From NCBI RefSeq assembly GCF_006345805.1, contig NC_043018.1, forward strand, positions 558,001 through 622,000: a DNA stretch of 64,000 bases, read 5' to 3'. Below are positions 5,560 to 60,150 of the stretch, one piece after another (within the stretch, counting starts at the first letter, position 1; each line of letters starts with the position of its first letter). The notes beneath the pieces were generated by a model that had not been told where the DNA came from, did no database searches, and saw only the letters and a list, made by a program, of their open reading frames with translations. The translations under genes were made by a program, and so were the position numbers. The DNA is from Octopus sinensis. Its lineage: Eukaryota.

Positions 5560-6866
5560 ATCCCACCATTGCGTATGACAATGATGTCCAACGTGTATAT
5601 TCGCTTCATGTACCAGCAGGCAATAATTAATAATTACTCTGAATACGGTCATCGCTAGTTAAGCGCTGGTCATTAGCAGTATTTTCTAAACGTCTCACTG
5701 GATTTATTTGACATCACATTGATTGCTGCTTTAGTAATTAATTTCAATATTGAAACTTCTATGATACGGTTATCATTGATGTTGATGTTGCTGAATTTGC
5801 TTTGGCTCCTGAGTATAGCGTTTAGCCCATGGTCATTTAGAAAATCTGTGATGGGAAGCAGTTCAGTCTTCACTATACCATTATTTATATAAGCGTTTTT
5901 CACCCTTTAGTACATTCTCAAATAAGTCTTCATTGTAAAGACTGCGACGTTATGGATTCGTGGTGATTTAGCTTCTAGACATAGCTGACAGTGCTACCGT
6001 GTAAACGCTTCATATTCACTTTCAGAAGGTTTGATAAAATTGATGTTATGGAACTTTGGTACTTTTGATAATTGCTTTCCTATCACTCATTCCTCATCAG
6101 CAAATTTATGTCGATAATTTTCTCTTTTATTAACTTAAATATATGATTGGAATTATCATGGCGAGAATTTTCTCCTTAATGGCATTTGCAAAGCTTTTCC
6201 GTAGAGTAATTACTCATTATGAAAATAGATTATATGGAGACGCCAATTTATATATAGTTTATATTGTTTTGTTTTTTTCATAAGTTTGCTTCACTAAAGC
6301 CGTAGGCAGTTCCTTGTGTAATTGTGACCAGTCACATTGTGGTTGCTAATGGATGGAATAATGAAAACTGTTTCCATAACAGATTGTCTGAAAAATATTC
6401 GTTTTTAGCATTAAATATATTGATTTCGTCTACGAACTATGTCTAACCTCTAATCTTAATGACGTACCAAGTTGGAGGACAATACTTCTAAAATATAAAT
6501 CATACCGAAGCTTCCGGTTCTTATTGGATATTTAGATTTTAAGCACAATAGTGATATATCAATGCTGTAATCATTTACAGAGTAAATTATCAAAACCGGT
6601 GAAGAAGAGAAGCAACTTAGACCAGTTATTAAATTACCTTTATAGTAAGCGTCTGTTGGATAACTACGACAGCTAACTTATGACGGATAAATGTAAGATA
6701 CAGGTGAGACAATACAACAATACAGACTACGTGGGATATATTTGCCACCAAACACAGAAAAATATACAATATAATTAAATTCTAAAATCCTGCGTTTCAT
6801 TTCTATATCACCAAATTGATTTGGTTTAAAGATACATTTAAGGGCGTCCACTATTGTTCTGTTCAT
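5560..6866 (-). pseudogene. Possible highly decayed Helitron Rep/helicase remnant
   Basis: Weak motif echoes in plausible order and spacing: GKYIPRSLYCCIVSPVSY (cf. YYLRLLL..V.GPTSF) and, about 1 kb downstream, MSNKSSETF (cf. DE..MS.K..FE). Not decisive. Confidence 0.2.
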
Positions 6867-23670: not shown

Positions 23671-23700
23671 TATATATATTATATATAATATATTTATATC

Positions 23701-23985
23701 ATCACAATCAAGGAACGGCCATAATAGGCCATTCACCCACTAGAAATAACAGCCAAAGCTTCAACCGCAAAATAACATTAATTCCGTAAACCAGAGAAAA
23801 TTAAAAAACATTTACCCTGTAAATTCTTATACGATGCACCGTTTCATCTACTGTTTAATGGTAAACTAACCTGATTAAATTAAATTTTCTCCTGGTTTAC
23901 GGAATTAATGTTATTTTGCGGTTGAAGCTTTGGCTATTATTTCTAGTGGGTGAATGGCCTATTATGGCCGTTCCTTGATTGTGAT
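23701..23985. repeat. Hairpin with ~102-bp arms; diverged relative of the 471-bp array unit
   Basis: 23701-23802 is the reverse complement of 23883-23985 with about 2 differences. CACTAGAAATAACAGCCAAAG and AAAACATTTACCCT align with the array unit. Confidence 0.85.
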
Positions 23986-24194
23986 GTTGAACTTAAAAAT
24001 GGTCTATGACTATTTAATTTTTTCCACTAGGCCGCAAAAAAATTTTTTCCCACTAGGTGGCAAAAAAATTCTACAAAATTTTTTGCCACCCTATATTGAT
24101 TAATTATATATATATTTATATATATATATATTATATATTTATATATATTTTATATTATATATATGTTATATTATTTATATATATTTATATATTG

Positions 24195-25654: not shown

Positions 25655-26620
25655 ACACACTCACAAAAGGGGTGGCGAATAAAATGCCGTCTAAAATACG
25701 CAAAAATGAAAATAACACTAATATCTCATTTTAACAGATATATTTACCAAAATTACATTAAAATATCTTGAAATACTAACGAGTGAATTTATTCAATAAA
25801 ATCGCAATCTCCTGCAAATCTTCTGGACAGTCTCCTTGATTAATTTGGTGAATGCTGCCACAATTCTTGCTTTCAGTTCATCCTTGGTGTTATAAGTTTT
25901 GTTGGGTTCTAGCTGAACTTCGTCCCTCATATAATAATAAAAGGGGGTTGCCATCTGGGGAGTTTGGTGACAAGACGTTAGGGGTGATGTGGTCGCAGAA
26001 ATTGTCTAACAGCCATGACTGGTTTCTCCTGTTTATGTGGCGTGGTACTGAGTCCTGTTGCCAGACATAGTGTCTTCCAGAAGCCACTTTCTTGACCCAG
26101 GGCAGCACTACTTTCTCGAGGCACTTGATGTAGGACTTCGTATTGAGTCTGAGGCCGTGTGGGAAGATGAAAGTAGGCCTAACGTCGCCATCATTAGTGA
26201 TCACCCCAAATATCATGTTTGATTTTTATCACGCTTGGTACATGTCCGCACAATGCGCTCTTCTCAGATTGACACCCAGATATTCAGAAATGTCCATATG
26301 GGAGCTTCCGGCGCGAATGCCAAGCAATAGAGTTTGTTGGTTCCAAATTTCTGACACGGTGAATTACGTTATGGTACCAGTCTTCTCAAAGATGGTGCCC
26401 AACAGAGTCTACTATACTGTGAGCATGCGCGAAATAAAAAATACGAAACAGTCACAGACTCTACTATACAATGAGCATGTGGGTATGATTTGCGTCTGCG
26501 CAGAGGTTTCAAAAGTTAGGATATACAAACCGTTAGATCTACATGTGCTTCTAACAGTCTGTGCGTCTAGGATTACGAAGGCTTCCCACTGAAGAACCTG
26601 GCCTGGCAAATATATTCCGT
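25655..26620 (-). pseudogene. DD37D (maT-like) Tc1/mariner transposon remnant
   Basis: ORF 25890-26216 contains YVWQQDSVPRH...NVLSPNSPDGNP. The expected third catalytic D position follows 37 residues after the QQD aspartate but is disrupted. Confidence 0.8.
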
Positions 26621-26902
26621 GTGTTTGCTAAAAATAGGTAGAAACCGTTCGGTCTGGGATATAGCTGAGATGGTAAATGTTTTTAATTTTCTTTCCTTTC
26701 ATGAATTTATCCCTTTTTGTGGTTCTAGCACTACACTTCCTTATTTGGAAGTCTTTTATTATATTTCTATACGAAAAATATATAGTCTAACGACTAACTC
26801 GTCTTTTGTACTAGGCCAATGGTAATAATAATTTATTTTATTACCCTATTTGATTATGTTTATATATATATTATATATATATAATATATAATATATATAT
26901 AT

Positions 26903-28416: not shown

Positions 28417-28802
28417 GTGGAAGCACTCCGTCGGTTACGACGACGAGGGTTCCGGTTGATCCGATCAACGGAACAGCCTGCTCGTGAAATTAACGTGTAA
28501 GTGGCTGAGCACTCCTCAGACACGTATACCCATAACGTAGTTCTCGGGGATATTCAGCGTGACACAGAGAGTGACAAGGCCGGCCCTTTGAAATACAGGT
28601 ACAACAGAAACAGGAAGTAAGAGTGAGAGAAAGTTGTGGTGAAAAAGTACACCAGGGATCACCACCATCCCCTGCCAGAGCCTCGTGGATCTTTAGGTGT
28701 TTTCGCTCAATAAACACTCACAACGCCCGGTCTGGGAATCGAAACCGCGATTCTACGAACGCGAGTCCGCTGCCCTAACCACTGGGCCATTGCGCCTCCA
28801 CA
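28417..28802 (-). mobile_element. SINE C, 12-bp TSD
   Basis: Reverse complement of the 2600-2984 family. TSD AGAAGTCTGAAT at 28405-28416 and 28803-28814. Confidence 0.9.
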
Positions 28803-30211: not shown

Positions 30212-30671
30212 TAAATTAGAGACGAAACCACTATTATGCAAATCAAACAAAGAAAGACTTAAGCCAATACATAAAATAATTTATATAAATTAAAATTTAA
30301 CAATTATAAATAACCACTACGATCGTTTCGTGTCAGCACATCTTCGAGACATACATAAATACATATGCGTACATAAATACATATACGTACACATATATAT
30401 ACAAATATGCATATGCACACATATACAGACAAACTCACAGATATACGATATACAAATATTTTGAAAAATTCAGAAGTGTACGTGTTATATGTTGCCGTTG
30501 AATATTGTATAAATAGAGCAGAAAACTTAACTTCAAATCCTTCATCCAGGGATGGAAGTCGGGATGTGGTGATCATAGGGACTATCTTCGTTGAGCGGGT
30601 GTAGAAGTAAGAACACTGGGGAAACAAAAGTTCATGAAAAGAACTGTAAGGGAATAAATGAAAGATGTGGT

Positions 30672-31058
30672 GGAGGAAGCACTCCGTCGGTTGCGACGAT
30701 GAGGGTTCCGGTTGATCCGAATCAACGGAACAGCCTGCTCGTGAAATTAACGTGTAAGTGGCTGAGCACTCCACAGGCACGTTCACCCTTAGCGTAGTTC
30801 TCGGGGATATTCAGCGTGACACAGAGAGTGACAAGGCCGGCCCCTTGAAATACAGGTACAACAGAAACAGGAAGTAAGAGTGAGAGAAAGTTGTGGTGAA
30901 AGAGTACAGCAGGGATCACCACCATCCCCTGCCGGAGCCTCGTGGAGCTTTTAGGTGTTTTCGCTCAATAAACACTCACAACGCCCGGTCTGGGAATCGA
31001 AACCGCGATCCTATGACCGCGAGTCCGCTGCCCTAACCACTAGGCCATTGCGCCTCCA
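30672..31058 (-). mobile_element. SINE C, full length
   Basis: Reverse complement of family C. Confidence 0.9.
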
Positions 31059-33997: not shown

Positions 33998-36900
33998 TTA
34001 GTTAGTTAGTTAGTTAATTTGGCTCAAAAGCAAATAGCAAGGCCATGTAGGGGGACATGGAGTTAAGTACAGGGTGGTGTTCATGTAAAGAGTTCAGGCC
34101 ACTTGAGGTTCAGGGAGGCTTTGAGCAAAGTGGTCGTCGGCATCTTCACCATCTCGTCTGGCAGCTTGTTCCACGGATCCGCAACCCGGACGGAGAAAGC
34201 TCCTCTCCTTCGATTAAGATGAAATCGTCGCAGGTAGAGCTTTTCGGAATGACCCCGCAGCCGACGCTCTGGAGCAGGAGTGAAGAACAGCTCTTTCGAG
34301 AGGTTACACTTTCCGCTTATGATGTTGTGGGCGAGAATGAGATCACCACGGCGGCGGCGTTTTTCAAGAGAATAAAGGTCGAGCGTCCTCAGCCTTTCTT
34401 CGTAGGACAAATTTTTGAGACCATGAAACATGCGGGTAGCCAGCTTCTGGACTCTTTCGAGATGCTGTATGTCTTTGAGGAGATAAGGAGAAGAGGCTTG
34501 AATCCCATACTCCAATATAGGTCTCACCAGCGTGACATAGAGTGGTAGGAATATGGCTGCCGTGAGCATTCCGAATGACCGTCGAATCAAGAACAGAATT
34601 CCGCGTGCTTTGTTGGCAGCACGGACGCACTGGGCCGAAGGCGAAAAGGAGGAATCCACCAAGATACCCAGGTCCTTTACCTGATCGGTCCTCTCCAGCA
34701 GCAGACGACCCGGCTCGAAATCAAGTTGAGTTGTAGGAGTAGAGCCGACAGGCAGATGACAGCACTTTGACACGTTCAGACACAGGTCCCAATCGTTAGA
34801 CTACTTCCAAATTTGGTGGAGGCATCGACGAAGATCCTCTATATTACCGCGAGGAGCGACCAGTTTGATATCGTCGGCAAATGGAAGGGTGTGTTGCGTG
34901 AGGTCGTCGGGCAAGTCATTTATGAAGACTAAGAACAACAAGGGCCCAAGCACTGAACCTTGAGGCATGCCACTGCTCGCACTGGAGACGTCGGACCGCG
35001 AACCATTAACTTGGACTTGGAAGGAGTGATCTGAGAGGAAGGCACCAACCCATCGTACAATATCCGGATGGAAACTATATGCTTGAAGCTTGACAAGTAA
35101 TAGGCGGTGGTTTACCGAGTCAAAAGCTTTGGCAAAGTCCAATAAAACGATGCCAACAGCATCACTATCATCGAGGATGCGCGTCACCAATTCTTCCATT
35201 ACTAGTAAGTTGGTCAAGCATGATCTCTTCGGCACGAAGCTGTGTTGGGAATCAGAGATAGAGGCTGTGTTTAGGAGGTGGAGCATCATACTTTTCTTAA
35301 GGATGGTTTCGAACATCTTGCTGATTATTGATGTAAGGGAAACCGGTCGGTAGTTAAGCGGGTCTTCGCGGCTCCCTTTCTTCAAAATTGGGCAGATTAT
35401 CGCTGTTCTCCAGTCTGCAGGTATAACACCCGTCGCCAATGACATATTGAATAGTCGTGTTAAGGGCTCGCAGATGACCGGAGCCAACGCTTTGATAACC
35501 CGTGGGTGTATGCCGTCAGGGCCGTGACCCTTGTTGACATCGAGGCCTTGAATAACACGTTTGACTTCGTCCCGCGTGATGACCAATCGAAGCATTGGAG
35601 GTACCGATCTATCAAATGGAGGGGGTTCATGACCATCATCTTGTTTGAAAATAGTTGAAAAAGCCTCGGCAAATAATTGACTCTGTTGATAAGGGTCCTC
35701 AATCGATACGCCTGTTGAGTCTACCAACGTTGCAATCTGGTTGTTCAAGCGGGAATTCCGCTGGACATGGGCAAAGAAGGTTTTTGGATTGCTACTGGCA
35801 TTTGCCGCGATTTTGTATTCATAACTGAAGCGTTCTTTCTTTTCAATTTTCACTGCTCTGTCTCGTTGAGTTTTGTACACCTCAAAAGCTGCAGTCGAAT
35901 CCAGATTTTTGAATTCAGCCCAAGCAATATCTCTGAGTTGACGTTCTCGTTTAACCTTCTTCGTCACCCAGGGCTTGTGTTTCTTCCTCTTGGGAAGCCC
36001 AACGGGAACTGTCTGGTCAGTCAAACATATTACATATGCTTTGAGGGATGACCATAGTTCGTCAACTGAGGACAACGTCATCAGGGATCGCCAGTCCAGA
36101 AGCGCGGAAGCCTCGGTTAGAATTTCAAGATTAATTGCAGAGAAGACTCTACGTGGCAGCGAAGTAGTCGTGGGCGTAGAAAAAGTTGTGTGCATGACGA
36201 ACTTCAGGACCGCATGATCACTCTTGGCAAGAGGGGCGCACACAGATACGTCTGACACTGATCTTGGATAGCGGGAGAATACCAGATCCAGCATAGATGG
36301 CTGCTGCCCAGACCGATGCCTTGTCGGATATTCAACATGTTGCGATAGAAAACAATCTTCAGCCACGTCAAGAAGGGCCTGGCCAAACCGGGAAGATGTT
36401 GTACAAATTGATGCGGGCCAATCGATCGTGGGAGCGTTGAAGTCTCCTAGTACCAAACAGTCATGCGAAGCTGAAACGAATCTTATCGCTTCGAGTAAAT
36501 GAGCATCGTCCTGGGGGTCGGCAAGAGGCGGCCTGTAGACAGCCAACACGGGCACGCAAAACTCAGATAGGCTCAGCTTGCAATAGACGGCATCGAATTT
36601 TGTTGTAGGTTGAGCATTAGTGGGTAGAATACCGCTGGACGGTTTGTGCTCAGACTTAACATACACAGCAACACCTCCACCTCGCCTTTTTCCTCTGTCA
36701 CATCTGAAAAGGACGTAGCCCTGCAGGTGGATTTCTGAGTCCTTTACTGCTGGAGTCAGCCAAGTCTCAGTGATAGCTATCACATCAGGGGAGTCACGTA
36801 TGGCCAGTGTAAATAGTTCACTGAACTTTGGGAATAAGGAGCACAAGTTGGTGTAGACGATGCTGAGCTGTGAAGTCTGAGGGGCGAGAGTTGGGGAACA

Positions 36901-37030
36901 AGCAGAATAAGGGGTATCAGAGATAGCATCGTTGACGGGGGTATCAACTTCACTTCGATTTGCCCTCACATCACTTTCCCTGTCAGCACTACAGCATGGG
37001 ACCAGAGGTAGGACTTGATTATCAAGATAT
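33998..37030 (-). mobile_element. 5'-truncated CR1-group LINE (APE+RT), no ORF1
   Basis: ORF2 as listed below, short 3' UTR and (CTAA)n tail at 33998-34015. The frame is open to about 37029 without an ATG. No TSD found. Confidence 0.92.
34081..36969 (-). pseudogene. LINE ORF2 (endonuclease-reverse transcriptase, ~960 codons) with one in-frame TAG at 34801-34803
   Basis: APE motifs ITETWL, GGGVAVY, YRPP, GDFN, LDLVF, SDH; RT motifs NYRPVSLTS, DFAKAFDSV, PQGSVLGP, FADD. The two track ORFs are in the same frame, joined by IWK*SNDWDLCLNVSKC. C-terminus LVRPILEY, LSYEERL, LEKRRRRGDLI. Confidence 0.93.
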
Positions 37031-37221: not shown

Positions 37222-38235
37222 CTTTTCAAAACTATAATGGAAGTGACAAAGGAGCATATTCGGCATATTTTGCTTTATGAGTTCACTAGAGGCAATGGAA
37301 AGTGCGAGGAATATTAATGCAGTGTGGAAGCACTCCGTCGGTTACGACGACAAGGGTTCCGGTTGATCCGATCAACGGAACAGCCTGCTCGTGAAATTAA
37401 CGTGTAAATGGCTGAGCACTCCACAGACACGTGTACCCTTAACGTAGTTCTCGGGGATATTCAGCGTGACACAGAGAGTCACAAGGCCGGCCCTTTGAAA
37501 TACACGTACAACAGAAACAGGAAGTAAGAGTGAGAGAAAGTTGTGTTGAAAGAGTACAGCAGGCATCACCACCATCCCCTGCCGGAGCCTCGTGGAGCTT
37601 TAGGTATTTTCGCTCAATAAACACTCACAACGCCCGGTCTAGGAATCGAAACCGCGAGTCCGCTGCCCTAACCACTGGGCCATTGCGCCTCCACTTTCAA
37701 AGCTATAATGGAGGTAACAAAGGAGCATATTCGGCATATTTTGCTTTATGAGTTCACTAGAGGCAATGGAAAGTGCAAGGAATATTAATACAGTACAGGG
37801 GAATCGGATAATAAGCGTAAGTCAGTGTTCTTCCAGAAATTCGATGCCCGATACTACAGACTGGAAGACGAGCCTCATCCTGGAAGATCTGTAGAGTTCG
37901 ACGAGGGAGTCCTGCAAACACACATGGAACAAAAACCCCTCCTAGCTGTTGAGGAACTAGCAGAGTATCTGGGATTTGGTCATTCAACCATTCATCGACA
38001 CCTGCATGCTATTGGAAGAGTCAGCAAATTGAGTCAATGTGTTCCACGCAAACTTTCCCAATCTTATCACGTGCAGAGAGTGAATGTGTGCTCTTCTATG
38101 ATGTCACGTCTCACGAACCTTTTTTTGACCGAATAATGACTGGTGATGAGAAATGGTTTCTGTGTAAAAATATCAAGCGCCGAAGACAGTAGGCAGGGAA
38201 AGGAGAGACACCGGCACCCCAGACTACAGAAGATG
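37222..38235 (+). pseudogene. mariner (DD34D-type) transposase remnant interrupted by SINE C
   Basis: MEVTKEHIRHILLYEF N-terminus, LEDEPHPGRS, CVPRKLS (cf. WVPHEL) and frameshifted IMTGDEKW. Truncated at a microsatellite. Confidence 0.85.
37324..37693 (-). mobile_element. SINE C flanked by ~100-bp direct duplication
   Basis: Flanks 37222-37323 and 37694-37795 match with about 5 mismatches. Confidence 0.88.
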
Positions 38236-39344: not shown

Positions 39345-39765
39345 TTGCTATTATTTTATGTTTGACTTTTGCTTTGCATTTGTACAAGATGGCTCCAAGT
39401 CTCACCCAGAAACTTCAAGAAACAACACGTTAGAAGTTCATGTTGGTGTTATGCTTAGAGTGCCAGTTTTGGTTTTGTACACAGTATTCTTCTACAGAAT
39501 GCTTAAGAAACCTTAAGAAAATTATGTGTTTGTTCTAAAATTTGAGATTACATAGTCTGTATTTTACGTAGGATTATGGGCAGTTCCCATGAGCATTATC
39601 CTTTGAATGTCTGCCATTTTGGAGTTTCCTGGTATCTGAGCTAGGTAGCAATCAGCTCCTTTTGTTATCATTCATAGGGCACCTAGACTTCAGGTTTCGC
39701 ATTTTGCTAATTTCTATTTCAAGAACTATATACTTGCTGAGTATTTGGTAGGTCTTGACAGATAC
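39345..39765 (-). pseudogene. 3' end of R4/Dong-like LINE
   Basis: Minus strand LEIEISKM...GAL*MITKGADCYLAQIPGNSKMADIQRIMLMGTAH. Confidence 0.75.
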
Positions 39766-39769
39766 GTTT

Positions 39770-40800
39770 CTATAGATTCATATTGGCGCTCAATGAGTGT
39801 TATTTTGAGGTCTTGTAGGTGAAGTTCCTCAGTGGTTGTGCCAGATAGAATTGTACAGATCCTTTTAGCTAGATTGAATGGGATATTTATTTTAGTGTGT
39901 TTATGATGGCATGAACTGAAGAGGATATAGTGTTTTCAGTCTGTTGGTTTGTAATAGATGTCAGTTTTACAGTTTGGTTGTTGGATATTTTATAACCAAA
40001 ATGTCCAGAAATGGAGCCTGACCCTTGCTATATTCTATTGTAAATTGAATATTGGAGATTATATTACTCAGTGTGGATTTGAAATCCAGGAGTTTATCAT
40101 AGGTTTCATTCCAGATGATAAAACAATCGTCTATGTACCTTTTCCAGTTTTCTCTTATATACTGGAGAAATAGGGGTCTAAATGTCTAGAGCTAAAGTTC
40201 ATATATGGTAGATTCAAAGAAACGGATTATTAGGTTCGCAAGGAAAGGCGCTGCTTTCGCTCCCATCGCGATATTGCATTTTTTTTGGCGGTAGTATATC
40301 GCATTGAATAGGAAGTAATTATTTTGTAGGATGAACTTCAGGGATTCAATGACATAGGTCTGGTTTATGCGGTCCAGGAGATCTTCGGAATATTTTTCTA
40401 ACCAGCATTTTATTGCCTCTCTTCCGTAGTCATGTGGAATGTTAGTGTAGAGGTTGATGACATCGGAGCAGACTAATAGTGCTTCTTCGTTGGTGGTTTT
40501 TGGTAGATGTTCTGGCATGGCCAGATCGTCTCTAAAGCAATTTTTGATGTATCTGAGGAAAGGTTTCAATAGTATGCCCAGAAAGTTGCTTAGGCGGTGG
40601 GTATCACTGGCTGGGCCCGCTATAATAGGCATTAATCTTAAGTCTTCTGGTGTTGAGATATTTATGTATAGACTTAGATTTGATTTGCAAGCATTAGTAA
40701 TTATCTGAAACATTCGCAGACTAAAACTGGTACTAACATTCTTCATGATAAAATTATTTTTGCACTTTCTACCTTGTTTTACTTTCCTTATACATATCAA
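39770..40800 (-). pseudogene. Penelope-like element reverse transcriptase fragment
   Basis: PIIAGPASDTHRLSNFL, DVINLYTNIPH, NNYFLFN, AMGAKAAPFLANL, then shifted RYIDDCFIIW (YIDD at 40126-40137), PFLDILV, TDIYYKPTD and SSCH. Confidence 0.9.
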
Positions 40801-40850
40801 CTCGTGTGTTCCTTTTCAACCTACTATATACATACATACTTAAATACACA

Positions 40851-40936
<86 letters not shown>

Positions 40937-41064
40937 GGTGAATGAATTATCCTAGTATTGATAATTCGGTTAATCGATACCTGGGTAGCAAATTCACTGT
41001 GAACACCATGTAGGAAGCCTTAAAAAAGTTTTTGTCCGTCTTGAGGCTGATAGAGGTTCCTTGT

Positions 41065-41147
41065 CTTTCCTGATGAGAAGACGGCATAATGCACCCTTTA
41101 TTCCTTCGGAATTAAGAATATGCAGTCTTCGAAACATGTGTTGAAAG
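41065..41147 (+). ncRNA. Type I hammerhead ribozyme motif, canonical core
   Basis: CUUUC-CUGAUGA-GAAGAC...GUCUUC-GAAAC-AUGU-GUU^GAAAG: 5-bp stem I, 6-bp stem II extended by GCAUA/UAUGC, and a short stem III containing the palindrome ACAUGU. Confidence 0.8.
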
Positions 41148-41192
41148 TAAAGGAATTTTGTTAAAATCTTCGTTTGACTCCATTCTTTCATT

Positions 41193-49966: not shown

Positions 49967-50002
<36 letters not shown>

Positions 50003-50195
50003 GGTGGTGGTGGTAGAAGCAGCAGCAGCTGCAGTAGTGGTAGTAGTGGTAGTAGTGGTGGTGGTGGTGGTAGAAGCAGCAGCAGCTGCAGTAGTGGTAG
50101 TAGTGGTAGTAGTGGTGGTGGTGGTGGTGGTGGTAGAAGCAGCAGCAGCTGCAGTAGTGGTAGTAGTGGTAGTAGTGGTGGTGGTGGTAGCACCA
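49900..50195. repeat. Compound (TAG)/(TGG)/(GCA) microsatellite with 3 higher-order units
   Basis: GTGGTAGAAGCAGCAGCAGCTGCAGTAGTGGTAGTAGTGGTAG occurs three times. Confidence 0.9.
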
Positions 50196-52669: not shown

Positions 52670-53330
52670 GAGGATTTGAGTCTATGTGGCGCAAAGGAGC
52701 GAAAAGAGAAGATTAAATCTTGTTCATGGCGAAGGCGGGAGTGCGGACAGTCCTGTGCAAAACAATCCTAACAGAAACTGGTGATGTAATGAATGACCGG
52801 TAGAGCAGAAATGGCGCGAGACCGGGGTATCATTGCTGAGTCTAATGTCTCGAAGGTGCTCCGCGAACCGGTCAGCCAAGCGGCGTCCCGTGTGACCAAT
52901 GTATAGAGAAGGAAGGAAAGAGAAGGAGATGCAGTAAATGACGTTGCTAGAAGTGCAGTTTAGAAAGACAGTGATATGATAGCGACCATGATGGTTGCCT
53001 GTGAGGATGGTGGTGTTGGAGAGGTAGGTGCTAGTGCGGCAGTGTGGGTAGGAGCAGGGGAGCGAGCCAGGCTGTGAAGAGGTGTTCGGGAAGGAACTGT
53101 GGACCAGAAAGTCACGTAGGTTATGGGCTCGTTTGAAAGAGGGAAGGGGTAGGTTGGTGAAGGTGTGCGAAGTGGAGGGGTCGCACTGTAGTCACCGGAA
53201 GGCTCGGAGAATGGTGTGTTTGTGGGGTGGTAGGTGAGTGGGAAACGGGAGACGAGAAACGGCGGGTCGTGTGCTAGGAGAAAGAGAGAGAGAGAATGCA
53301 GTCGACATGTTCTCTGCGGGGTGTAAGAAG
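52670..53330 (-). pseudogene. Penelope-like GIY-YIG endonuclease domain
   Basis: Manual translation NCTSSNVIYCIS...SLYIGHTGRRLADRFAEHLRDIR...PVSRHF..TGHS, then shifted SRLRHEQDLIFSFRSFAPHRLKS. Confidence 0.85.
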
Positions 53331-53873: not shown

Positions 53874-54150
53874 AGATCATGTAAACGTAGAGTAGATGAA
53901 ACCATGGCGACTGAAGAAGGGGTTTTTTCTTTGTGCTAATTGTCCTGTACTCTATTTTTTGTTGTTTATAAATATGTCCAGTTCCTTGAGTTTGTGTCTA
54001 TGTTTTCGTTTCTCATTGTGTTCGACGTCTTTTTGGTGTCCTGTACTCATATATGCGTGTATATATACATGTAGAGGTAGGTACGTACATATATGTATAT
54101 ATATATGCATATGTTTTATTTACTAATATATTATATATATATATATATAT

Positions 54151-57100
54151 AACGATTTAGGAGTGACCCCAACAGGTCACTCGTCCACCAGAAAGAGCAG
54201 CCATAACTGACACCGCCAAGTATTATTAATTCAGAAATTAGGTGAAAATTTAAAAACATTTACCCTAATTCATCTTTTAGACGTTGCAACGTTTCTGTGT
54301 CATTAATGATTAAATTAGCTTAATTAAATTAAATTAAGCCAATCTACCATAGGTTACACTTCATCAGTAAAGACCTGGGAGAGACAAATATACACGAGGC
54401 GTCTGTATCGAAGCCTACGGGATATCTGACTTAAAATTTTCAAGACTGACGTATTCGTGCCAAACTTATCAACAGTAAATATAAACTGCCGATTCAATCT
54501 CAGAATTATTCAGAAAATTATCAATTAGTCAATTTAGGGTAGCAAAAAAATTCAATAGAAATTTATCGCAACCAGCGGCCTGGTGAAAAAGAGAAAATAG
54601 TCATCGACTAAATATATAAATATAACGATTTAGGAGTGACCCCAACAGGTCACTCGTCCACCAGAAAGAGCAGCCATAACTCACACCGCCAAGTATTATT
54701 AATTCAGAAATTAGGTGAAAATTTAAAAACATTTACCCTAATTCATCTTTTAGACGTTGCAACGTTTCTGTGTCATTAATGATTAAATTAGCTTAATTAA
54801 ATTAAATTAAGCCAATCTACCATAGGTTACACTTCATCAGTAAAGACCTGGGAGAGACAATATACACGAGGCGTCTGTATCGAAGCCTACGGGATATCTG
54901 ACTTAAAATTTTCAAGACTGACGTATTCGCGCCAAACTTATCAACAGTAAATATAAACTGCCGATTCAATCTCAGAATTATTCAGAAAATTATCAGTTAG
55001 TCAATTAGGGTAGCAAAAAAATTCAATAGAAATTTATCGCAACCAGCGGCCTGGTGAAAAAGAGAAAATAGTCATCGACTAAATATATAAATATAACGAT
55101 TTAGGAGTGACCCCAACAGGTCACTCGTCCACCAGAAAGAGCAGCCATAACTCACACCGCCAAGTATTATTAATTCAGAAATTAGGTGAAAATTTAAAAA
55201 CATTTACCCTAATTCATCTTTTAGACGTTGCAACGTTTCTGTGTCATTAATGATTAATTAGCTTAATTAAATTAAATTAAGCCAATCTACCATAGGTTAC
55301 ACTTCATCAGTAAAGACCTGGGAGAGACAAATATACACGAGGCGTCTGTATCGAAGCCTACGGATATCTGACTTAAAATTTTCAAGACTGACGTATTCGC
55401 GCCAAACTTATCAACAGTAAATATAAACTGCCGATTCAATCTCAGAATTATTCAGAAAATTATCAATTAGTCAATTTAGGGTAGCAAAAAAATTCAATAG
55501 AAATTTATCGCAACCAGCGGCCTGGTGAAAAAGAGAAAATAGTCATCGACTAAATATATAAATATAACGATTTAGGAGTGACCCCAACAGGTCACTCGTC
55601 CACCAGAAAGAGCAGCCATAACTCACACCGCCAAGTATTATTAATTCAGAATTAGGTGAAAATTTAAAAACATTTACCCTAATTCATCTTTTAGACGTTG
55701 CAACGTTTCTGTGTCATTAATGATTAAATTAGCTTAATTAAATTAAATTAAGCCAATCTACCATAGGTTACACTTCATCAGTAAAGACCTGGGAGAGACA
55801 AATATACACGAGGCGTCTGTATCGAAGCCTACGGGATATCTGACTTAAAATTTTCAAGACTGACGTATTCGCGCCAAACTTATCAACAGTAATATAAACT
55901 GCCGATTCAATCTCAGAATTATTCAGAAAATTATCAATTAGTCAATTTAGGGTAGCAAAAAAATTCAATAGAAATTTATCGCAACCAGCGGCCTGGTGAA
56001 AAAGAGAAAATAGTCATCGACTAATATATAAATATAACGATTTAGGAGTGACCCCAACAGTCACTCGTCCACCAGAAAGAGCAGCCATAACTCACACCGC
56101 CAAGTATTATTAATTCAGAAATTAGGTGAAAATTTAAAAACATTTACCCTAATTCATCTTTTAGACGTTGCAACGTTTCTGTGTCATTAATGATTAAATT
56201 AGCTTAATTAAATTAAATTAAGCCAATCTACCATAGGTTACACTTCATCAGTAAAGACCTGGGAGAGACAAATATACACGAGGCGTCTGTATCGAAGCCT
56301 ACGGGATATCTGACTTAAAATTTTCAAGACTGACGTATTCGCGCCAAACTTATCAACAGTAAATATAAACTGCCGATTCAATCTCAGAATTATTCAGAAA
56401 ATTATCAATTAGTCAATTTAGGGTAGCAAAAAAATTCAATAGAAATTTATCGCAACCAGCGGCCTGGTGAAAAAGAGAAAATAGTCATCGACTAAATATA
56501 TAAATATAACGATTTAGGAGTGACCCCAACAGGTCACTCGTCCACCAGAAAGAGCAGCCATAACTCACACACACCGCCAAGTATTATTAATTCAGAAATT
56601 AGGTGAAAATTTAAAAACATTACCCTAATTCATCTTTTAGACGTTGCAACGTTTCTGTGTCATTAATGATTAAATTAGCTTAATTAAATTAAATTAAGCC
56701 AATCTACCATAGGTTACACTTCATCAGTAAAGACCTGGGAGAGACAAATATACACGAGGCGTCTGTATCGAAGCCTACGGGATATCTGACTTAAAATTTT
56801 CAAGACTGACGTATTCGCGCCAAACTTATCAACAGTAATATAAACTAAACTGCCGATTCAATCTCAGAATTATTCAGAAAATTATCAATTAGTCAATTTA
56901 GGGTAGCAAAAAAATTCAATAGAAATTTATCGCACCAGCGGCCTGGTGAAAAAGAGAAAATAGTCATCGACTAAATATATAAATAAACGATTTAGGAGTG
57001 ACCCCAACAGGTCACTCGTCCACCAGAAGAGCAGCCATAACTCACACCGCCAAGTATTATTAATTCAGAATTAGGTGAAAATTTAAAAACATTTACCCTA

Positions 57101-59020
57101 ATTCATCTTTTAGACGTTGCAACGTTTCTGTGTCATTAATGATTAAATTAGCTTAATTAAATTAATTAAGCCAATCTACCATAGGTTACACTTCATCAGT
57201 AAAGACCTGGAGAGACAAATATACACGAGGCGTCTGTATCGAAGCCTACGGGATATCTGACTTAAAATTTTCAAGACTGACGTATTCGCGCCAAACTTAT
57301 CAACAGTAAATATAAACTGCCGATTCAATCTCAGAATTATTCAGAAAATTATCAATTAGTCAATTTAGGGTAGCAAAAAAATTCAATAGAAATTTATCGC
57401 AACCAGCGGCCTGGTGAAAAAGAGAAAATAGTCATCGACTAAATATATAAATATAACGATTTAGGAGTGACCCCAACAGGTCACTCGTCCACCAGAAAGA
57501 GCAGCCATAACTCACACCGCCAAGTATTATTAATTCAGAAATTAGGTGAAAATTTAAAAACATTTACCCTAATTCATCTTTTAGACGTTGCAACGTTTCT
57601 GTGTCATTAATGATTAAATTAGCTTAATTAAATTAAATTAAGCCAATCTACCATAGGTTACACTTCATCAGTAAAGACCTGGGAGAGACAAATATACACG
57701 AGGCGTCTGTATCGAAGCCTACGGGATATCTGACTTAAAATTTTCAAGACTGACGTATTCGCGCCAAACTTATCAACAGTAAATATAAACTGCCGATTCA
57801 ATCTCAGAATTATTCAAAAATTATCAATTAGTCAATTTAGGGTAGCAAAAAAATTCAATAGAAATTTATCGCAACCAGCGGCCTGGTGAAAAAGAGAAAA
57901 TAGTCATCGACTAAATATATAATATAACGATTTAGGAGTGACCCCAACAGGTCACTCGTCCACCAGAAAGAGCAGCCATAACTCACACCGCCAAGTATTA
58001 TTAATTCAGAAATTAGGTGAAAATTTAAAAACATTTACCCTAATTCATCTTTTAGACGTTGCAACGTTTCTGTGTCATTAATGATTAAATTAGCTTAATT
58101 AAATTAAATTAAGCCAATCTACCATAGGTTACACTTCATCAGTAAAGACCTGGGAGAGACAAATATACACGAGGCGTCTGTATCGAAGCCTACGGGATAT
58201 CTGACTTAAAATTTTCAAGACTGACGTATTCGCGCCAAACTTATCAACAGTAAATATAAACTGCCGATTCAATCTCAGAATTATTCAGAAAATTATCAAT
58301 TAGTCAATTTAGGGTAGCAAAAAAATTCAATAGAAATTTATCGCAACCAGCGGCCTGGTGAAAAAGAGAAAATAGTCATCGACTAATATATAAATATAAC
58401 GATTTAGGAGTGACCCCAACAGGTCACTCGTCCACCAGAAAGAGCAGCCATAACTCACACACCGCCAAGTATTATTAATTCAGAAATTAGGTGAAAATTT
58501 AAAAACATTTACCCTAATTCATCTTTTAGACGTTGCAACGTTTCTGTGTCATTAATGATTAAATTAGCTTAATTAAATTAAATAAGCCAATCTACCATAG
58601 GTTACACTTCATCAGTAAAGACCTGGGAGAGACAAATATACACGAGGCGTCTGTATCGAAGCCTACGGATATCTGACTTAAAATTTTCAAGACTGACGTA
58701 TTCGCGCCAAACTTATCAACAGTAAATATAAACTGCCGATTCAATCTCAGAATTATTCAGAAAATTATCAATTAGTCAATTTAGGGTAGCAAAAAAATTC
58801 AATAGAAATTTATCGCACCAGCGGCCTGGTGAAAAAGAGAAAATAGTCATCGACTAAATATATAAATATAACGATTTAGGAGTGACCCCAACAGGTCACT
58901 CGTCCACCAGAAAGAGCAGCCATAACTCACACCGCCAAGTATTATTAATTCAGAAATTAGGTGAAAATTTAAAAACATTTACCCTAATTCATCTTTTAGA
59001 CGTTGCAACGTTTCTGTGTC
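54151..59020 (-). repeat. Tandem array of ~471-bp units (10 full + 1 partial), each full unit with a hammerhead motif
   Basis: Unit starts (AACGATTTAGG) at 54151, 54624, 55095, 55566, 56036, 56508, 56986, 57455, 57926, 58398 and 58870. Lengths are 469-478 bp and differences are mostly 1-bp indels. Confidence 0.97.
54272..54375 (-). ncRNA. Type I hammerhead ribozyme motif in array unit 1 (repeated in units 1-10)
   Basis: Minus strand GUCUUUA-CUGAUGA(54367-54361)-A-GUGU...ACAC-A-GAAAC(54295-54291)-GUUGCAAC-GUC^UAAAAGAU. Stem III is the perfect palindrome ACGTTGCAACGT. Deviation: A.A opposition at the base of stem II. Confidence 0.72.
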
Positions 59021-60150
59021 ACACACCTACATACACACATATACACACGCCCACACACCTACATACACACACATACATACACACACATACACGGACACAC
59101 CCATACATACTTACATACATACACCTATACACACACGCCTACACACCTACATACACACACATGCATACCCACACACATGCACACACACACATACGCACAT
59201 GCATGCATGCATGCACACGCGCACACCTACACGCATACACACACACACACGCACGTACACATACATACATACACACACGCATACATACACCCATACACAT
59301 ACATGCATCCTACACACACATACATACACACTCACACATACATACACACACACACACTCACTCACACACCTGTATGTACGCGCACACACATGCACATACA
59401 CACACTTCCCCACACCCACACGTACATACATACACACTCACACACATACACACACACACACACACGGACATACATCTATGCACACACATACATACACACA
59501 TACTCACATACATTCATCGGACACACTGCCACCCAACATACACACAGACACACTCACACATCCACACACATACATACTTACGCGCATACTCGCAGGCGCG
59601 CGCACATACGCACTTGCGCCGGCTCGCGCACGCATACGCGCCGCATACACCTCGCTCTTGGACCCGACGAGACCTCCCGCCCGTTCCTGGGACCGTCGCG
59701 TGTCGTTGGGTTTTCCCACGCCTGTCTCCGCGGTACCACTCTTCCATCTTCCCCTCAGCTGGAGTCCTTTTTCCTTAACCCCCCCCCTTTTTCGTTACAC
59801 ACACGCGCACACATATACACACATTGCCTATATATATACATCACTCTTACACACATTCAATCTACTCGCCATTAATACCACCACGACACTGGACACACAC
59901 ACACACTACTACTCAACACACGCTGGCACGCTACATACGCCCCACCCCTTCCCCTCCCTCCCTTCCTCCTTCCTTCTTTTTCTTACTACCGACCTTGTCT
60001 GCTAGCTGACCACTAGTCTCGCCCTACCTCACACGCCTACACACTGACGCACACACTAACACACACATATTTTTTTGTTTCTTCATCTCGCCTCACACAC
60101 ACACATACACACACGCACACGCACACACTCACACATACACACACATCTGT
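59021..60150. repeat. Degenerate CA-rich low-complexity tract (possibly low-quality sequence)
   Basis: Irregular (CA)/(CATA) runs starting abruptly inside array unit 11. Confidence 0.8.

What the first reader, a model, noticed from the sequence alone, without database searches (positions are those of the whole stretch)
54151..59020. Homogeneous 471-bp tandem array in which every unit encodes a hammerhead ribozyme: candidate cephalopod retrozyme/circRNA system
Seen: ten nearly identical non-coding units plus one partial. On the minus strand each full unit reads stem I (GUCUUUA/UAAAAGAU), CUGAUGA, a long AU-rich branched stem II closed by GUGU/ACAC, GAAAC, a 12-nt palindromic stem III, and GUC. 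Established: minimal type I hammerheads with palindromic stem III that work as dimers occur in Penelope pseudo-LTRs and in metazoan non-LTR retrozymes. Retrozymes are tandem repeats whose multimeric transcripts self-cleave into monomers that can circularise. Inference: a read-through minus-strand transcript would be cut once per unit (unit 1 between 54280 and 54279), releasing ~471-nt monomers that could be reverse-transcribed by a PLE RT. PLE RT and GIY-YIG remnants are present in this window. I cannot tell whether this family has been described. Caveat: an A.A opposition at stem II positions 10.1/11.1 may slow cleavage.
Basis: partly seen in the sequence, partly recalled or inferred. Interest (0 to 1): 0.92.

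Follow-up and report, generated by a model that had tools for sequence, protein, structure and literature searches.

The report
Octopus hammerhead-ribozyme tandem repeat (retrozyme)
A very young ten-copy tandem repeat in an octopus genome carries one self-cleaving hammerhead ribozyme motif per 471-bp unit, and it looks like a cephalopod member of the known "retrozyme" class of parasitic RNA-circle elements, with an unusually long ribozyme arm that standard ribozyme searches miss.

Summary
Window 54139-59021 holds 10.3 head-to-tail copies of a ~471-bp, 34% GC, non-coding unit. The units differ almost only by homopolymer-length indels. On the minus strand every full unit has a type I hammerhead (HHR): helix I, CUGAUGA, a 63-nt helix II, GAAA, a palindromic helix III and a GUC cleavage site.

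The motif is not chance. Three older, diverged copies in the window and one in Octopus sinensis belong to the same family. Across them the catalytic core is kept while helices I and III change by compensatory substitutions.

All copies are 5'-truncated and end at (TA)n microsatellites, at two internal positions of the unit. None starts or ends at the cleavage site, and two run across it. One is a head-to-head pair. These are retroposition signatures that fit a multimeric or circular RNA template.

Rfam hammerhead models detect nothing, but they also miss a second hammerhead in the window that has a canonical core.

Verdict: a cephalopod member of the metazoan non-LTR retrozymes with a long-helix-II HHR variant. 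Cleavage, transcription, circularisation and the mobilising RT remain untested.

The parts
54139..59021 (-). Tandem array: 10 complete ~471-bp units between cleavage sites, plus 21-23 nt of a unit at the minus-strand 5' end and 141 nt at the 3' end
   Evidence: TRF gives period 471, 10.3 copies, 98% matches. Unit lengths are 470-476 nt. Units differ almost only by homopolymer indels. GC is 34%.
54272..54374 (-). Hammerhead of the 3'-most full motif. Helix I 5' strand 54374-54368; CUGAUGA 54367-54361; unpaired A 54360; helix II 54359-54297 (63 nt); unpaired A 54296; GAAA 54295-54292; helix III ACGU/UGCA/ACGU; C17 at 54280; cut between 54280 and 54279; helix I 3' strand 54279-54272
   Evidence: Coordinates; pairings; fold.
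54745..54847 (-). Hammerhead, C17 at 54753
55216..55317 (-). Hammerhead, C17 at 55224
55686..55788 (-). Hammerhead, C17 at 55694
56156..56258 (-). Hammerhead, C17 at 56164
56632..56734 (-). Hammerhead, C17 at 56640
57105..57206 (-). Hammerhead, C17 at 57113
57576..57678 (-). Hammerhead, C17 at 57584
58047..58149 (-). Hammerhead, C17 at 58055
58521..58622 (-). Hammerhead, C17 at 58529
58999..59021 (-). Truncated 3' half of an eleventh hammerhead (ACACAGAAACGTTGCAACGTC). This is the minus-strand 5' end of the array, cut inside helix II and abutting a CA-type microsatellite
54244..54264 (-). One instance of the block GGTAAATGTTTTTAAATTTTC, 15 nt 3' of the cleavage site. It is the most conserved non-ribozyme block of the family
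   Evidence: Present in the array and in copies A, B (part) and C.
54161..54182 (-). One instance of a hairpin (GAGUGACC-UGUU-GGGGUCACUC) that is kept through compensatory changes in copies A and B
   Evidence: RNAalifold: 10 of 26 predicted pairs keep pairing after changes on both sides.
54089..54151 (.). (TA)n microsatellite at the minus-strand 3' junction. The array ends inside the unit's own UA-rich patch (unit positions ~135-141)
   Evidence: A paralogue of the flanking repeat in O. sinensis (L001 48997-49267) also ends in (TA)n.
59020..59577 (.). CA-rich compound microsatellite at the other junction. No target-site duplication is recognisable
23690..23886 (-). Old family copy A: unit positions 418-473 then 1-141, 72% identical to the array. 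It runs across the cleavage site, keeps GAAAC-GGUGCAUCG-UA (A17 at 23830) and ends in (TA)n
23880..24105 (+). Old family copy B: unit positions ~22-236, head-to-head with A and 97% identical to A where they overlap. It ends in (TA)n
26560..26862 (+). Oldest family copy C: a complete hammerhead (CUGAAGA 26589-26595, GAAA 26641-26644, C17 at 26654) followed by unit positions 1-~236. It ends in (TA)n
   Evidence: Profile nhmmer E 3e-5. The reciprocal hit back to the array has E 0.005. Sequence, pairings, 3' block alignment.
39729..40815 (-). Frameshifted remnant of a Penelope-like element reverse transcriptase (candidate class of mobiliser, not linked to the array)
   Evidence: Best hits are Octopus sinensis and O. 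bimaculoides proteins, E 1e-70, 66-72% identity. Homologues carry RVT_1 plus GIY-YIG.
52727..53191 (-). PLE GIY-YIG endonuclease remnant (NVIYCIS...YIGHTGRRLADRFAEH), about 0.9 kb from the array's 3' end, 5'-truncated
   Evidence: tblastn to P0007 residues 293-431, E 2e-7. Pfam GIY-YIG E 0.008, below the curated cut-off.

Best explanation
The array is a cephalopod non-LTR retrozyme: a non-coding, non-autonomous retroelement whose unit encodes a type I hammerhead ribozyme.

Proposed cycle:
1. The minus strand is transcribed through several units (inferred).
2. Each hammerhead cuts after C17 of GUC, for example between 54280 and 54279. It may act alone through its 4-bp helix III, or with a neighbour through a 12-bp intermolecular helix III. 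[quoted passage not shown] The chemistry is established for hammerheads; activity here is inferred.
3. A host RtcB-type ligase circularises the monomers (inferred from PMC7229834).
4. A retrotransposon RT, most likely from a Penelope-like element, nicks AT-rich DNA. Here the targets are (TA)n microsatellites.
5. The RT starts cDNA synthesis at internal UA-rich patches of the RNA, at unit positions ~141 or ~236.
6. It then copies a circular or uncleaved multimeric template for more than one unit length. This gives tandem arrays (10.3 units here) or 5'-truncated single copies.

Shown directly by the sequence: the array, the motif, its covariation among diverged copies, the junction positions, the microsatellite targets and the PLE remnants.
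For: - Array: real and homogeneous.
- Motif: complete hammerhead in all ten units. A descriptor scan finds 4 independent hammerhead loci in the window against 0.04 expected per simulated window.
- Covariation: helix I pairs 2.2-2.4/1.2-1.4 are U-A x3 in the array and C-G x3 in copy C. Pair 15.3-16.3 is G-C, G-C, C-G across array, A and C. Pair 15.4-16.4 is U-A, G-U, G-C. Meanwhile CUGA(N)GA, GAAA, C15.2-G16.2 and GU(H) are kept.
- Family spread: four more copies, A, B and C in the window and one in O. sinensis L043 955-1044.
- Junctions: every copy ends at (TA)n, at unit position ~141 (array, A) or ~236 (B, C, L043). None begins or ends at the cleavage site, and A and C run uninterrupted across it. 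The template was therefore not a cleaved linear monomer.
- A and B form a head-to-head pair from one source (97% identical). This fits an enzyme that nicks and extends both target strands, prefers AT-rich DNA and initiates internally, as shown for the PAc PLE (PMC11167929).
- RNA structure: sense RNA MFE -124.7 kcal/mol, z -4.64, against z -2.99 for the antisense. About 60% of bases are paired, in the linear and the circular fold. Further hairpins show compensatory changes.
- Dimer: -69.3 kcal/mol against 2 x -26.9 for two monomers.
- PLE remnants are in the window.
- Class features match published non-LTR retrozymes: low GC, no ORF/LTR, and tandem type I HHRs that coexist with PLEs (PMC7229834). 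The unit length lies within the 51-972 bp reported by a 2026 preprint.
Against: - No Rfam hammerhead model matches, even at E<=10 in a 141-nt search. The same models also miss the canonical-core hammerhead at 41070-41142, so this says little.
- One unpaired A lies between C11.1 and G12, which is not part of the published consensus. Together with the A between A9 and G10.1 it may lower activity.
- The monomer hammerhead fold is 3.8 kcal/mol above the MFE of the 118-nt domain.
- There is no evidence on transcription, cleavage or circles.
- No array-type copy was found in 195 kb of O. sinensis and O. bimaculoides DNA, nor in metagenome, viral or prokaryote collections.
- The unit shows no similarity to DNA flanking the PLE copies sampled.
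- Covariation rests on only three independent lineages.
- DNA-level amplification of a shorter insertion could also have produced the ten identical units.
Confidence: 0.72

Rival explanations
1. The array is ordinary satellite DNA that expanded at the DNA level, by unequal crossing-over or replication slippage, from an old hammerhead-bearing insertion. This hammerhead is a relic, weakened by the two unpaired A residues, and the array has no RNA life cycle today.
For: The ten units are practically identical, and DNA-level amplification or homogenisation can also produce that. The core geometry departs from the consensus next to G12. The HHR fold is not the MFE. No Rfam hit. No expression data.
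Against: All ten cores are intact. The unpaired A 5' of G12 is shared with copy C, which is only about 60% identical overall, so it is a family trait rather than a recent lesion. Helices covary. The array's two ends lie at a UA-rich patch and inside the hammerhead, next to microsatellites, like the single-copy retroposed relatives.
Confidence: 0.13
2. The element is retroposed, but the mobiliser is a LINE rather than a PLE. An APE-type endonuclease plus RT acts by target-primed reverse transcription with twin priming. The family then behaves as a SINE-like passenger that happens to carry a hammerhead.
For: A LINE with a long open APE+RT reading frame (722 aa) lies in the window at 34801-36969, whereas both PLE copies here are broken remnants. 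5' truncation, AT-rich targets and an inverted or direct pair (twin priming) are also known LINE signatures (established knowledge of L1).
Against: The unit has no similarity to the LINE or its 3' end. Type I hammerheads are specifically linked to PLE pseudo-LTRs and to retrozymes that co-occur with PLEs (PMC4209133; PMC7229834; preprint 10.64898/2026.07.22.740005). Microsatellite targeting without recognisable duplications, and extension of both strands, are described for PLEs.
Confidence: 0.12
3. The repeat is not a separate non-autonomous family. It is an amplified pseudo-LTR fragment of an autonomous PLE whose ORF lies elsewhere or has been deleted.
For: PLE pseudo-LTRs carry type I hammerheads with an extra nucleotide after A9, a long helix II, a short helix I and a palindromic helix III, which fits this motif. 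A 2026 preprint derives vertebrate retrozymes from pseudo-LTRs. A GIY-YIG remnant lies 0.9 kb away on the same strand.
Against: No RT or EN coding sequence lies inside or directly next to any of the five family copies. The nearby EN fragment is 5'-truncated and separated from the array by an unrelated repeat. The unit has no similarity to DNA around seven PLE copies from Octopus.
Confidence: 0.1
4. The motif is a chance match, or the array is an assembly artefact.
For: Differences between units look like long-read homopolymer errors, so the exact copy number may be imprecise.
Against: The expected number of such motifs is 0.01-0.04 per window. The motif recurs at the homologous position of diverged copies with compensatory changes. 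The family also exists in an independent O. sinensis assembly.
Confidence: 0.02

Closest known systems
Metazoan non-LTR retrozymes (Cervera & de la Pena 2020, PMC7229834; Li, Clavereau & Pollet 2026 preprint 10.64898/2026.07.22.740005)
   Same: Head-to-tail repeats of a few hundred bp with one type I hammerhead per unit. Low GC (34%). No ORF, LTR, PBS or PPT. Highly self-paired RNA. Coexistence with PLEs. Dispersed monomers plus a few multimers. The unit length lies within the 51-972 bp range and the copy number within reported ranges.
   Different: Helix II is 63 nt, where loop 2 normally caps about 4 bp. One unpaired A lies on each side of helix II. The motif is invisible to Rfam models. The 471-nt unit exceeds the 170-400 nt RNAs of the 2020 paper. 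No expression, cleavage or circularity data exist. No cephalopod example was found in the searchable literature.
Minimal hammerheads of Penelope-like element pseudo-LTRs (Cervera & de la Pena 2014, PMC4209133)
   Same: Type I topology. An extra nucleotide between A9 and G10.1, and a G10.1-C11.1 pair. Short, weak helix I (4 bp + bulge + 3 bp). Enlarged helix II. Palindromic helix III suited to dimer formation. Insertions in microsatellites, 5'-truncated and inverted copies.
   Different: No linked RT/EN ORF. Helix III is 4 bp plus a tetraloop rather than 0-2 bp. There is an additional unpaired A between C11.1 and G12. Helix II is far longer than the 6-8 bp described.
Satellite-encoded hammerheads: newt satellite 2 (~330 bp) and Dolichopoda cave-cricket pDo500 (~500 bp; PMC2837043)
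   Same: Tandem satellite with one hammerhead per unit, thought to process multimeric transcripts into monomers. Double-hammerhead (dimer) conformations. Compensatory changes in the stems among related copies. The unit size is close to pDo500.
   Different: Unrelated sequence and a different phylum. Here there is explicit evidence of dispersed retroposed copies at TA microsatellites. The hammerhead has a long helix II.
Plant LTR retrozymes (Cervera et al. 2016, PMC4918200)
   Same: Non-autonomous hammerhead-bearing retroelements, proposed to spread through circular RNA.
   Different: The plant elements have type III hammerheads inside LTRs, with PBS and PPT, 4-bp duplications, GC above 55% and Gypsy-type mobilisers. 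None of these is present here.

Membership tests
Metazoan non-LTR retrozyme | [quoted passage not shown] | tested here: met
   Period 471, 10.3 copies. Within the published 51-972 bp range.
Metazoan non-LTR retrozyme | One type I hammerhead motif per unit | tested here: met
   Ten complete motifs on the minus strand. Helices II and III are closed and helix I is open.
Metazoan non-LTR retrozyme | Non-coding; no LTR, PBS or PPT; low GC (<45-50%) | tested here: met
   ORFs <=50 aa with no Pfam hit. GC 34%. No terminal repeats other than the tandem units.
Metazoan non-LTR retrozyme | Mobile: independent insertions at other loci | tested here: met
   Copies A/B and C in the window and a fragment in O. 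sinensis L043. All are 5'-truncated and end in (TA)n.
Metazoan non-LTR retrozyme | Coexistence with Penelope-like elements in the genome | tested here: met
   RT remnant at 39729-40815 and GIY-YIG remnant at 52727-53191. Octopus homologues have RVT_1 plus GIY-YIG.
Metazoan non-LTR retrozyme | Highly self-paired monomer RNA | tested here: met
   MFE -124.7 kcal/mol, z -4.64, 0 of 100 shuffles as stable. About 60% of bases paired, linear or circular.
Metazoan non-LTR retrozyme | Transcribed and processed to unit-length linear and circular RNA | not testable with these tools
   No transcriptome DNA search is available. ORF-based look-ups in the protein collection found nothing.
Metazoan non-LTR retrozyme | Unit related to a PLE pseudo-LTR (proposal of the 2026 preprint) | tested here: inconclusive
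   No similarity to DNA around seven Octopus PLE copies, 195 kb in all. No full-length PLE with pseudo-LTRs was available.
Hammerhead ribozyme, type I | Conserved core C3-U4-G5-A6-N7-G8-A9, G12-A13-A14, A15.1-U16.1 and H17 | tested here: met
   CUGAUGA ... GAAA ... U-C in the array. CUGAAGA/GAAA/UC in copy C. GAAA/UA in copy A.
Hammerhead ribozyme, type I | Three helices supported by covariation | tested here: met
   Helix I has 3 pairs changed U-A to C-G. Helix III has 2 pairs with changes on both sides. The base of helix II is entirely different but still paired. Only three lineages are available.
Hammerhead ribozyme, type I | G10.1-C11.1 stacked directly on the core | tested here: inconclusive
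   A G-C pair is present in the array, but one unpaired A separates it from A9 and another from G12. Copy C has A-U plus the same unpaired A before G12.
Hammerhead ribozyme, type I | Match to Rfam hammerhead covariance models | tested here: not met
   No hammerhead hit at the gathering score or at E<=10. The control hammerhead at 41070-41142, with a perfect core, is also missed. The models do not tolerate 50-60-nt helix II inserts.
Hammerhead ribozyme, type I | Site-specific self-cleavage | not testable with these tools
   Needs in vitro transcription.
PLE minimal hammerhead (PMC4209133) | [quoted passage not shown] | tested here: met
   A at 54360. ACGUUGCAACGU is a perfect 12-nt palindrome. 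Helix I is 4+3 bp. Helix II is 63 nt.
PLE minimal hammerhead (PMC4209133) | Located in the pseudo-LTR of an RT/GIY-YIG element | tested here: not met
   No ORF lies within or adjoining any family copy.

The most novel reading that the evidence does not exclude
This family may define an active hammerhead variant outside the accepted consensus. It has an unpaired A between C11.1 and G12, kept in copies that are only about 60% identical. Loop 2 is replaced by an internal loop plus a 45-63-nt hairpin. If it cleaves, two things follow. Current covariance-model and descriptor censuses systematically miss hammerheads and retrozymes of cephalopods, and probably of other animals. The long helix II and the conserved blocks just 3' of the cleavage site may be recognition elements for the mobilising RT rather than parts of the ribozyme.
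Probability: 0.3. Interest if true: 0.62.

Novelty: new member of a known kind. Interest (0 to 1): 0.5.

Why it matters
- It would extend hammerhead retrozymes to cephalopods. No such report was found in the searchable literature.
- The locus is very young: ten essentially identical units. That makes it a good candidate for an active source of ~471-nt linear or circular RNA that can be tested directly.
- The junctions of five independent copies say something about mobilisation, which is the least understood step of the retrozyme cycle. They show TA-microsatellite targets, two preferred internal 3' ends, continuity across the cleavage site and a head-to-head pair. Together these point to internal initiation on circular or multimeric RNA by a PLE-like enzyme.
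- Rfam models miss both hammerhead families in this window. Genome-wide ribozyme counts in such genomes are therefore likely to be underestimates.

Tried and rejected
- Rfam at the gathering threshold on the whole window, and at E<=10 on 1.5 kb, 301 nt and 141 nt: no hammerhead or other ribozyme family. I judged this uninformative, because the canonical-core hammerhead at 41070 is missed too.
- Exact 27-mer across the cleavage site in metagenome, viral and prokaryote genome collections: no match.
- Conserved 20-nt block in metagenomes: 38 matches, none homologous by nhmmer, so all are chance.
- Sampling of 195 kb around PLE genes in O. sinensis and O. bimaculoides: no array and no hammerhead-bearing copy. 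Only one 90-bp 3' fragment turned up, in L043.
- Unit ORFs looked up by exact sequence, and a concatenated six-frame query searched against 5.8 billion proteins, to find assembled transcripts or other copies: nothing.
- Pfam on the unit ORFs: nothing.
- ARAGORN for a tRNA-derived promoter: nothing.
- MAFFT alignment of the three hammerheads misaligned the cores, so pairs were tabulated by script instead.
- Weak hammerhead-like matches at 6002-6100 (minus) and 39916-40032 (plus) have poor helices and no homologous support. I regard them as chance.
- The species was not determined beyond Octopus. Interspersed repeats are about 95% identical to O. sinensis copies and about 90% to O. bimaculoides copies.

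Full report
**1. Observation**

Tandem Repeats Finder reports a single array at 54139-59021 with period 471, 10.3 copies, 98% matches and 1% indels.

On the minus strand the pattern CTGATGA-N(40-70)-GAAAC-N(6-14)-GTC occurs ten times, all in the array. Shuffles give 0.02 expected. The 3' half-motif GAAACGTTGCAACGTC occurs eleven times. The eleventh copy (C17 at 58999) belongs to a unit truncated inside helix II, where the array meets a CA-rich microsatellite. Distances between successive cleavage sites are 470-476 nt.

A multiple alignment of the ten units has 29 variable columns. Most are single-base length differences in homopolymer runs. The rest are short GT/TA-repeat indels and two clean substitutions. 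The units are therefore essentially identical, and part of the residual variation may be long-read error.

The unit has 34% GC. Its longest ORFs are 43-50 aa, have no Pfam match and are absent from the protein collection.

Two details need correction:
- Helix II is a long unbranched hairpin: 4 bp, a 5x5 internal loop, then a ~19-bp stem.
- The 'A.A opposition' is better described as a G10.1-C11.1 pair with one unpaired A on each side.

**2. Is the hammerhead more than a chance motif?**

I wrote a descriptor that requires CUGANGA, a paired helix II base, GAAA, a helix III, UH and a helix I. It allows an optional unpaired nucleotide on either side of helix II.

With this descriptor the window contains four independent loci (the array counted once). 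Windows simulated with the same dinucleotide statistics contain 0.04 on average, and 0.01 at the stringency the array motif reaches.

The stronger evidence comes from relatives.
- Searching the window with the unit consensus found a head-to-head pair of old copies. Copy A is at 23886 to 23690 on the minus strand and covers unit positions 418-473 then 1-141. Copy B is at 23880 to 24105 on the plus strand and covers positions ~22-236. Both are about 71% identical to the array and 97% identical to each other.
- A profile built from these found a still older copy C at about 26560-26862 on the plus strand (E 3e-5). The reciprocal hit from C back to the array has E 0.005.
- Copy C in turn led to a 90-bp fragment in Octopus sinensis, L043 955-1044.

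Copy C has a complete hammerhead at the homologous place, and copy A has the 3' half. The pair table reads:

| Feature | Array | Copy A | Copy C |
|---|---|---|---|
| Helix I, pairs 2.2-2.4 / 1.2-1.4 | U-A, U-A, U-A | (5' half missing) | C-G, C-G, C-G |
| Helix III, pair 15.3-16.3 | G-C | G-C | C-G |
| Helix III, pair 15.4-16.4 | U-A | G-U | G-C |
| Base of helix II | GUGU/ACAC | (5' half missing) | ACCUG/UAGGU |
| 5' core box | CUGAUGA | (5' half missing) | CUGAAGA |
| Cleavage triplet | GUC | GUA | GUC |

GAAA, A15.1-U16.1 and C15.2-G16.2 are kept in all three. This is the pattern expected of a ribozyme under selection. It rests on only three independent lineages.

**3. Why Rfam is silent**

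No hammerhead model matches, even at E<=10 in a 141-nt search.

The window holds a second, unrelated hammerhead at 41070-41142 on the plus strand. It has a textbook core, a 6-bp helix II closed by G10.1-C11.1 and an 11-bp helix I, but a 54-nt helix II. It has homologues in O. sinensis that carry compensatory changes. Rfam misses this one as well.

So the models do not tolerate long helix II inserts, and the negative result says nothing about the array motif.

**4. The core peculiarity**

[quoted passage not shown] The array motif has all of them.

What is not in that consensus is the unpaired A between C11.1 and G12. The same A is present in copy C. It is therefore a trait of the family and not a recent lesion. 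Its effect on catalysis is unknown.

In a 118-nt context the hammerhead fold is 3.8 kcal/mol above the MFE. Two hammerhead domains together form the 12-bp intermolecular helix III, with -69.3 kcal/mol against 2 x -26.9. Helix III alone is 4 bp plus a UGCA loop, so cleavage by single motifs is also conceivable.

**5. Evidence that the family is retroposed**

- All five copies end, on their sense-strand 3' side, in a (TA)n microsatellite. The array and A end at unit position ~141. B, C and the L043 fragment end at ~236. Both positions lie in UA-rich patches of the unit.
- All copies are 5'-truncated at different points.
- No copy begins or ends at the self-cleavage site. A and C run uninterrupted across it, and the array begins 21-23 nt upstream of a site. 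The template was therefore an uncleaved multimer or a circularised monomer, not a cleaved linear monomer.
- A and B come from one source and lie head to head, each with its 3' end outward at a (TA)n tract.
- The array lies between a (TA)n tract and a CA-type microsatellite. The (TA)n tract terminates an interspersed repeat, whose paralogue in O. sinensis also ends in (TA)n. No target-site duplication is recognisable, as reported for PLEs that insert into microsatellites (PMC8557442).

The recombinant PAc PLE prefers AT-rich DNA, nicks and extends both strands and initiates reverse transcription internally (PMC11167929). Those three properties would account for these junctions. LINE twin priming remains an alternative.

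**6. RNA-level features outside the ribozyme**

The sense monomer folds to -124.7 kcal/mol with z -4.64, and 0 of 100 shuffles are as stable. The antisense strand gives -94.7 kcal/mol with z -2.99. About 60% of bases are paired in the linear and in the circular fold.

RNAalifold on the array, A, B and C predicts hairpins in which 10 of 26 pairs keep pairing after changes on both sides. One example is GAGUGACC/GGUCACUC in the array against GAAUGGCC/GGCCGUUC in A and B.

Three blocks are conserved in sequence among all copies:
- GGTAAATGTTTTT(N)AATTTTC, 15 nt after the cleavage site.
- TAGTC..GACTA...C(C/T)AGGCC.
- TACCCT near position 220.

Their role is unknown. A recognition site for the RT is one possibility.

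**7. Surroundings**

The window is octopod.
- A frameshifted PLE RT remnant at 39729-40815 (minus) has its best hits in Octopus sinensis and O. bimaculoides proteins (66-72% identity, E about 1e-70). Relatives of these carry RVT_1 plus GIY-YIG.
- A 5'-truncated GIY-YIG remnant lies at 52727-53191 (minus). The evidence is tblastn at E 2e-7, Pfam at E 0.008 (below the cut-off) and the motif NVIYCIS...YIGHTGRRLADRFAEH.
- A LINE with a 722-aa open APE+RT frame lies at 34801-36969.

None of these is physically linked to the array.

**8. Comparison with what is known**

The array meets the sequence-level criteria of metazoan non-LTR retrozymes. These are tandem units with one type I hammerhead each, low GC, no ORF/LTR/PBS/PPT, self-paired RNA and coexistence with PLEs (PMC7229834). 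The unit length lies within the 51-972 bp range, and 10 units is above the <=7 seen in 75% of families but far below the maxima (preprint 10.64898/2026.07.22.740005).

Its hammerhead resembles the PLE pseudo-LTR type more than the canonical loop-loop type. It differs from both by the very long helix II and the extra A before G12.

I found no paper in the searchable library that describes hammerheads or retrozymes in cephalopods. The library is incomplete, so this is not proof of novelty.

I classify the finding as a new member of a known kind. The ribozyme variant and the junction evidence on mobilisation are its most interesting aspects.

**9. What remains open**

- Transcription, cleavage, circularisation and the identity of the RT are all inferred.
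- DNA-level amplification could have produced the ten identical units from a shorter insertion.
- Family abundance is unknown. There was one short fragment in 195 kb of other Octopus DNA.
- Nothing turned up in metagenome, viral or prokaryote collections, or in the protein collection.

Noticed in passing
window 41058-41155 (+); relatives at L001 42006-42142 (+) and L001 38296-38434 (-): A second, unrelated type I hammerhead with a canonical core: CUGAUGA, then a 6-bp GAAGAC/GUCUUC base of a 54-nt helix II, GAAAC, AUGU, and GU-U. Helix I is 5+6 bp. It sits in a 260-bp island between two (TA)n tracts, next to and in opposite orientation to the PLE RT remnant. The O. sinensis homologues show compensatory changes (G-C to A-U in helix II). 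Rfam also misses it.
   Followed up: partly
L044 3750-3810 (+) (O. sinensis): A compact PLE-style minimal hammerhead: CUGAUGA, an extra A, a GGCUGG...UCAGCC helix II, then GAAAC and a near-palindromic GUUUGUUAACAACAAAC. It lies 6 kb upstream of a PLE-derived gene. This shows that Octopus also has short-helix-II PLE hammerheads.
   Followed up: no
window 34801-36969 (-): A long open frame (722 aa) encoding an APE-type endonuclease plus reverse transcriptase (LINE), in a GC-richer island. It may belong to a recently active element and is an alternative source of RT.
   Followed up: partly
window 2600-2985, 28418-28801, 30671-31058, 37325-37661: Four copies (two orientations) of a ~340-380-bp interspersed repeat. 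They are about 95% identical to each other and to a copy in O. sinensis (L001 50101-50485), and about 90% to one in O. bimaculoides (L003 19403-19772). Probably a SINE. This suggests the window's species is closer to O. sinensis.
   Followed up: no
window 53883-54151; L001 48997-49267: The DNA directly flanking the array's 3' end is an interspersed repeat, 96% identical to an O. sinensis copy. In both places it ends in a (TA)n tract, so the array appears to have landed in that repeat's TA tail.
   Followed up: partly
window 54139-59021: Differences between units are almost all 1-nt homopolymer length changes. This is the error profile of long-read assemblies, so the true units may be identical and the copy number may be approximate.
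   Followed up: partly
window 23995-24060 (+), inside copy B: Copy B carries an internal ~19-bp duplication of the CCACTAGG(C/T)...AAAAAAATT segment that the array lacks.
   Followed up: no
window 39916-40032 (+) and 6002-6100 (-): Weak hammerhead-like matches to the loose descriptor, with ~100-nt 'helix II' and poor helices I and III. The first lies antisense within the PLE RT remnant. Probably chance.
   Followed up: partly
window 50000-50190: A 57/63-bp minisatellite made of AGT/GGT/AGC triplets (91-96% matches). It has open frames on both strands and is unrelated to the finding.
   Followed up: no
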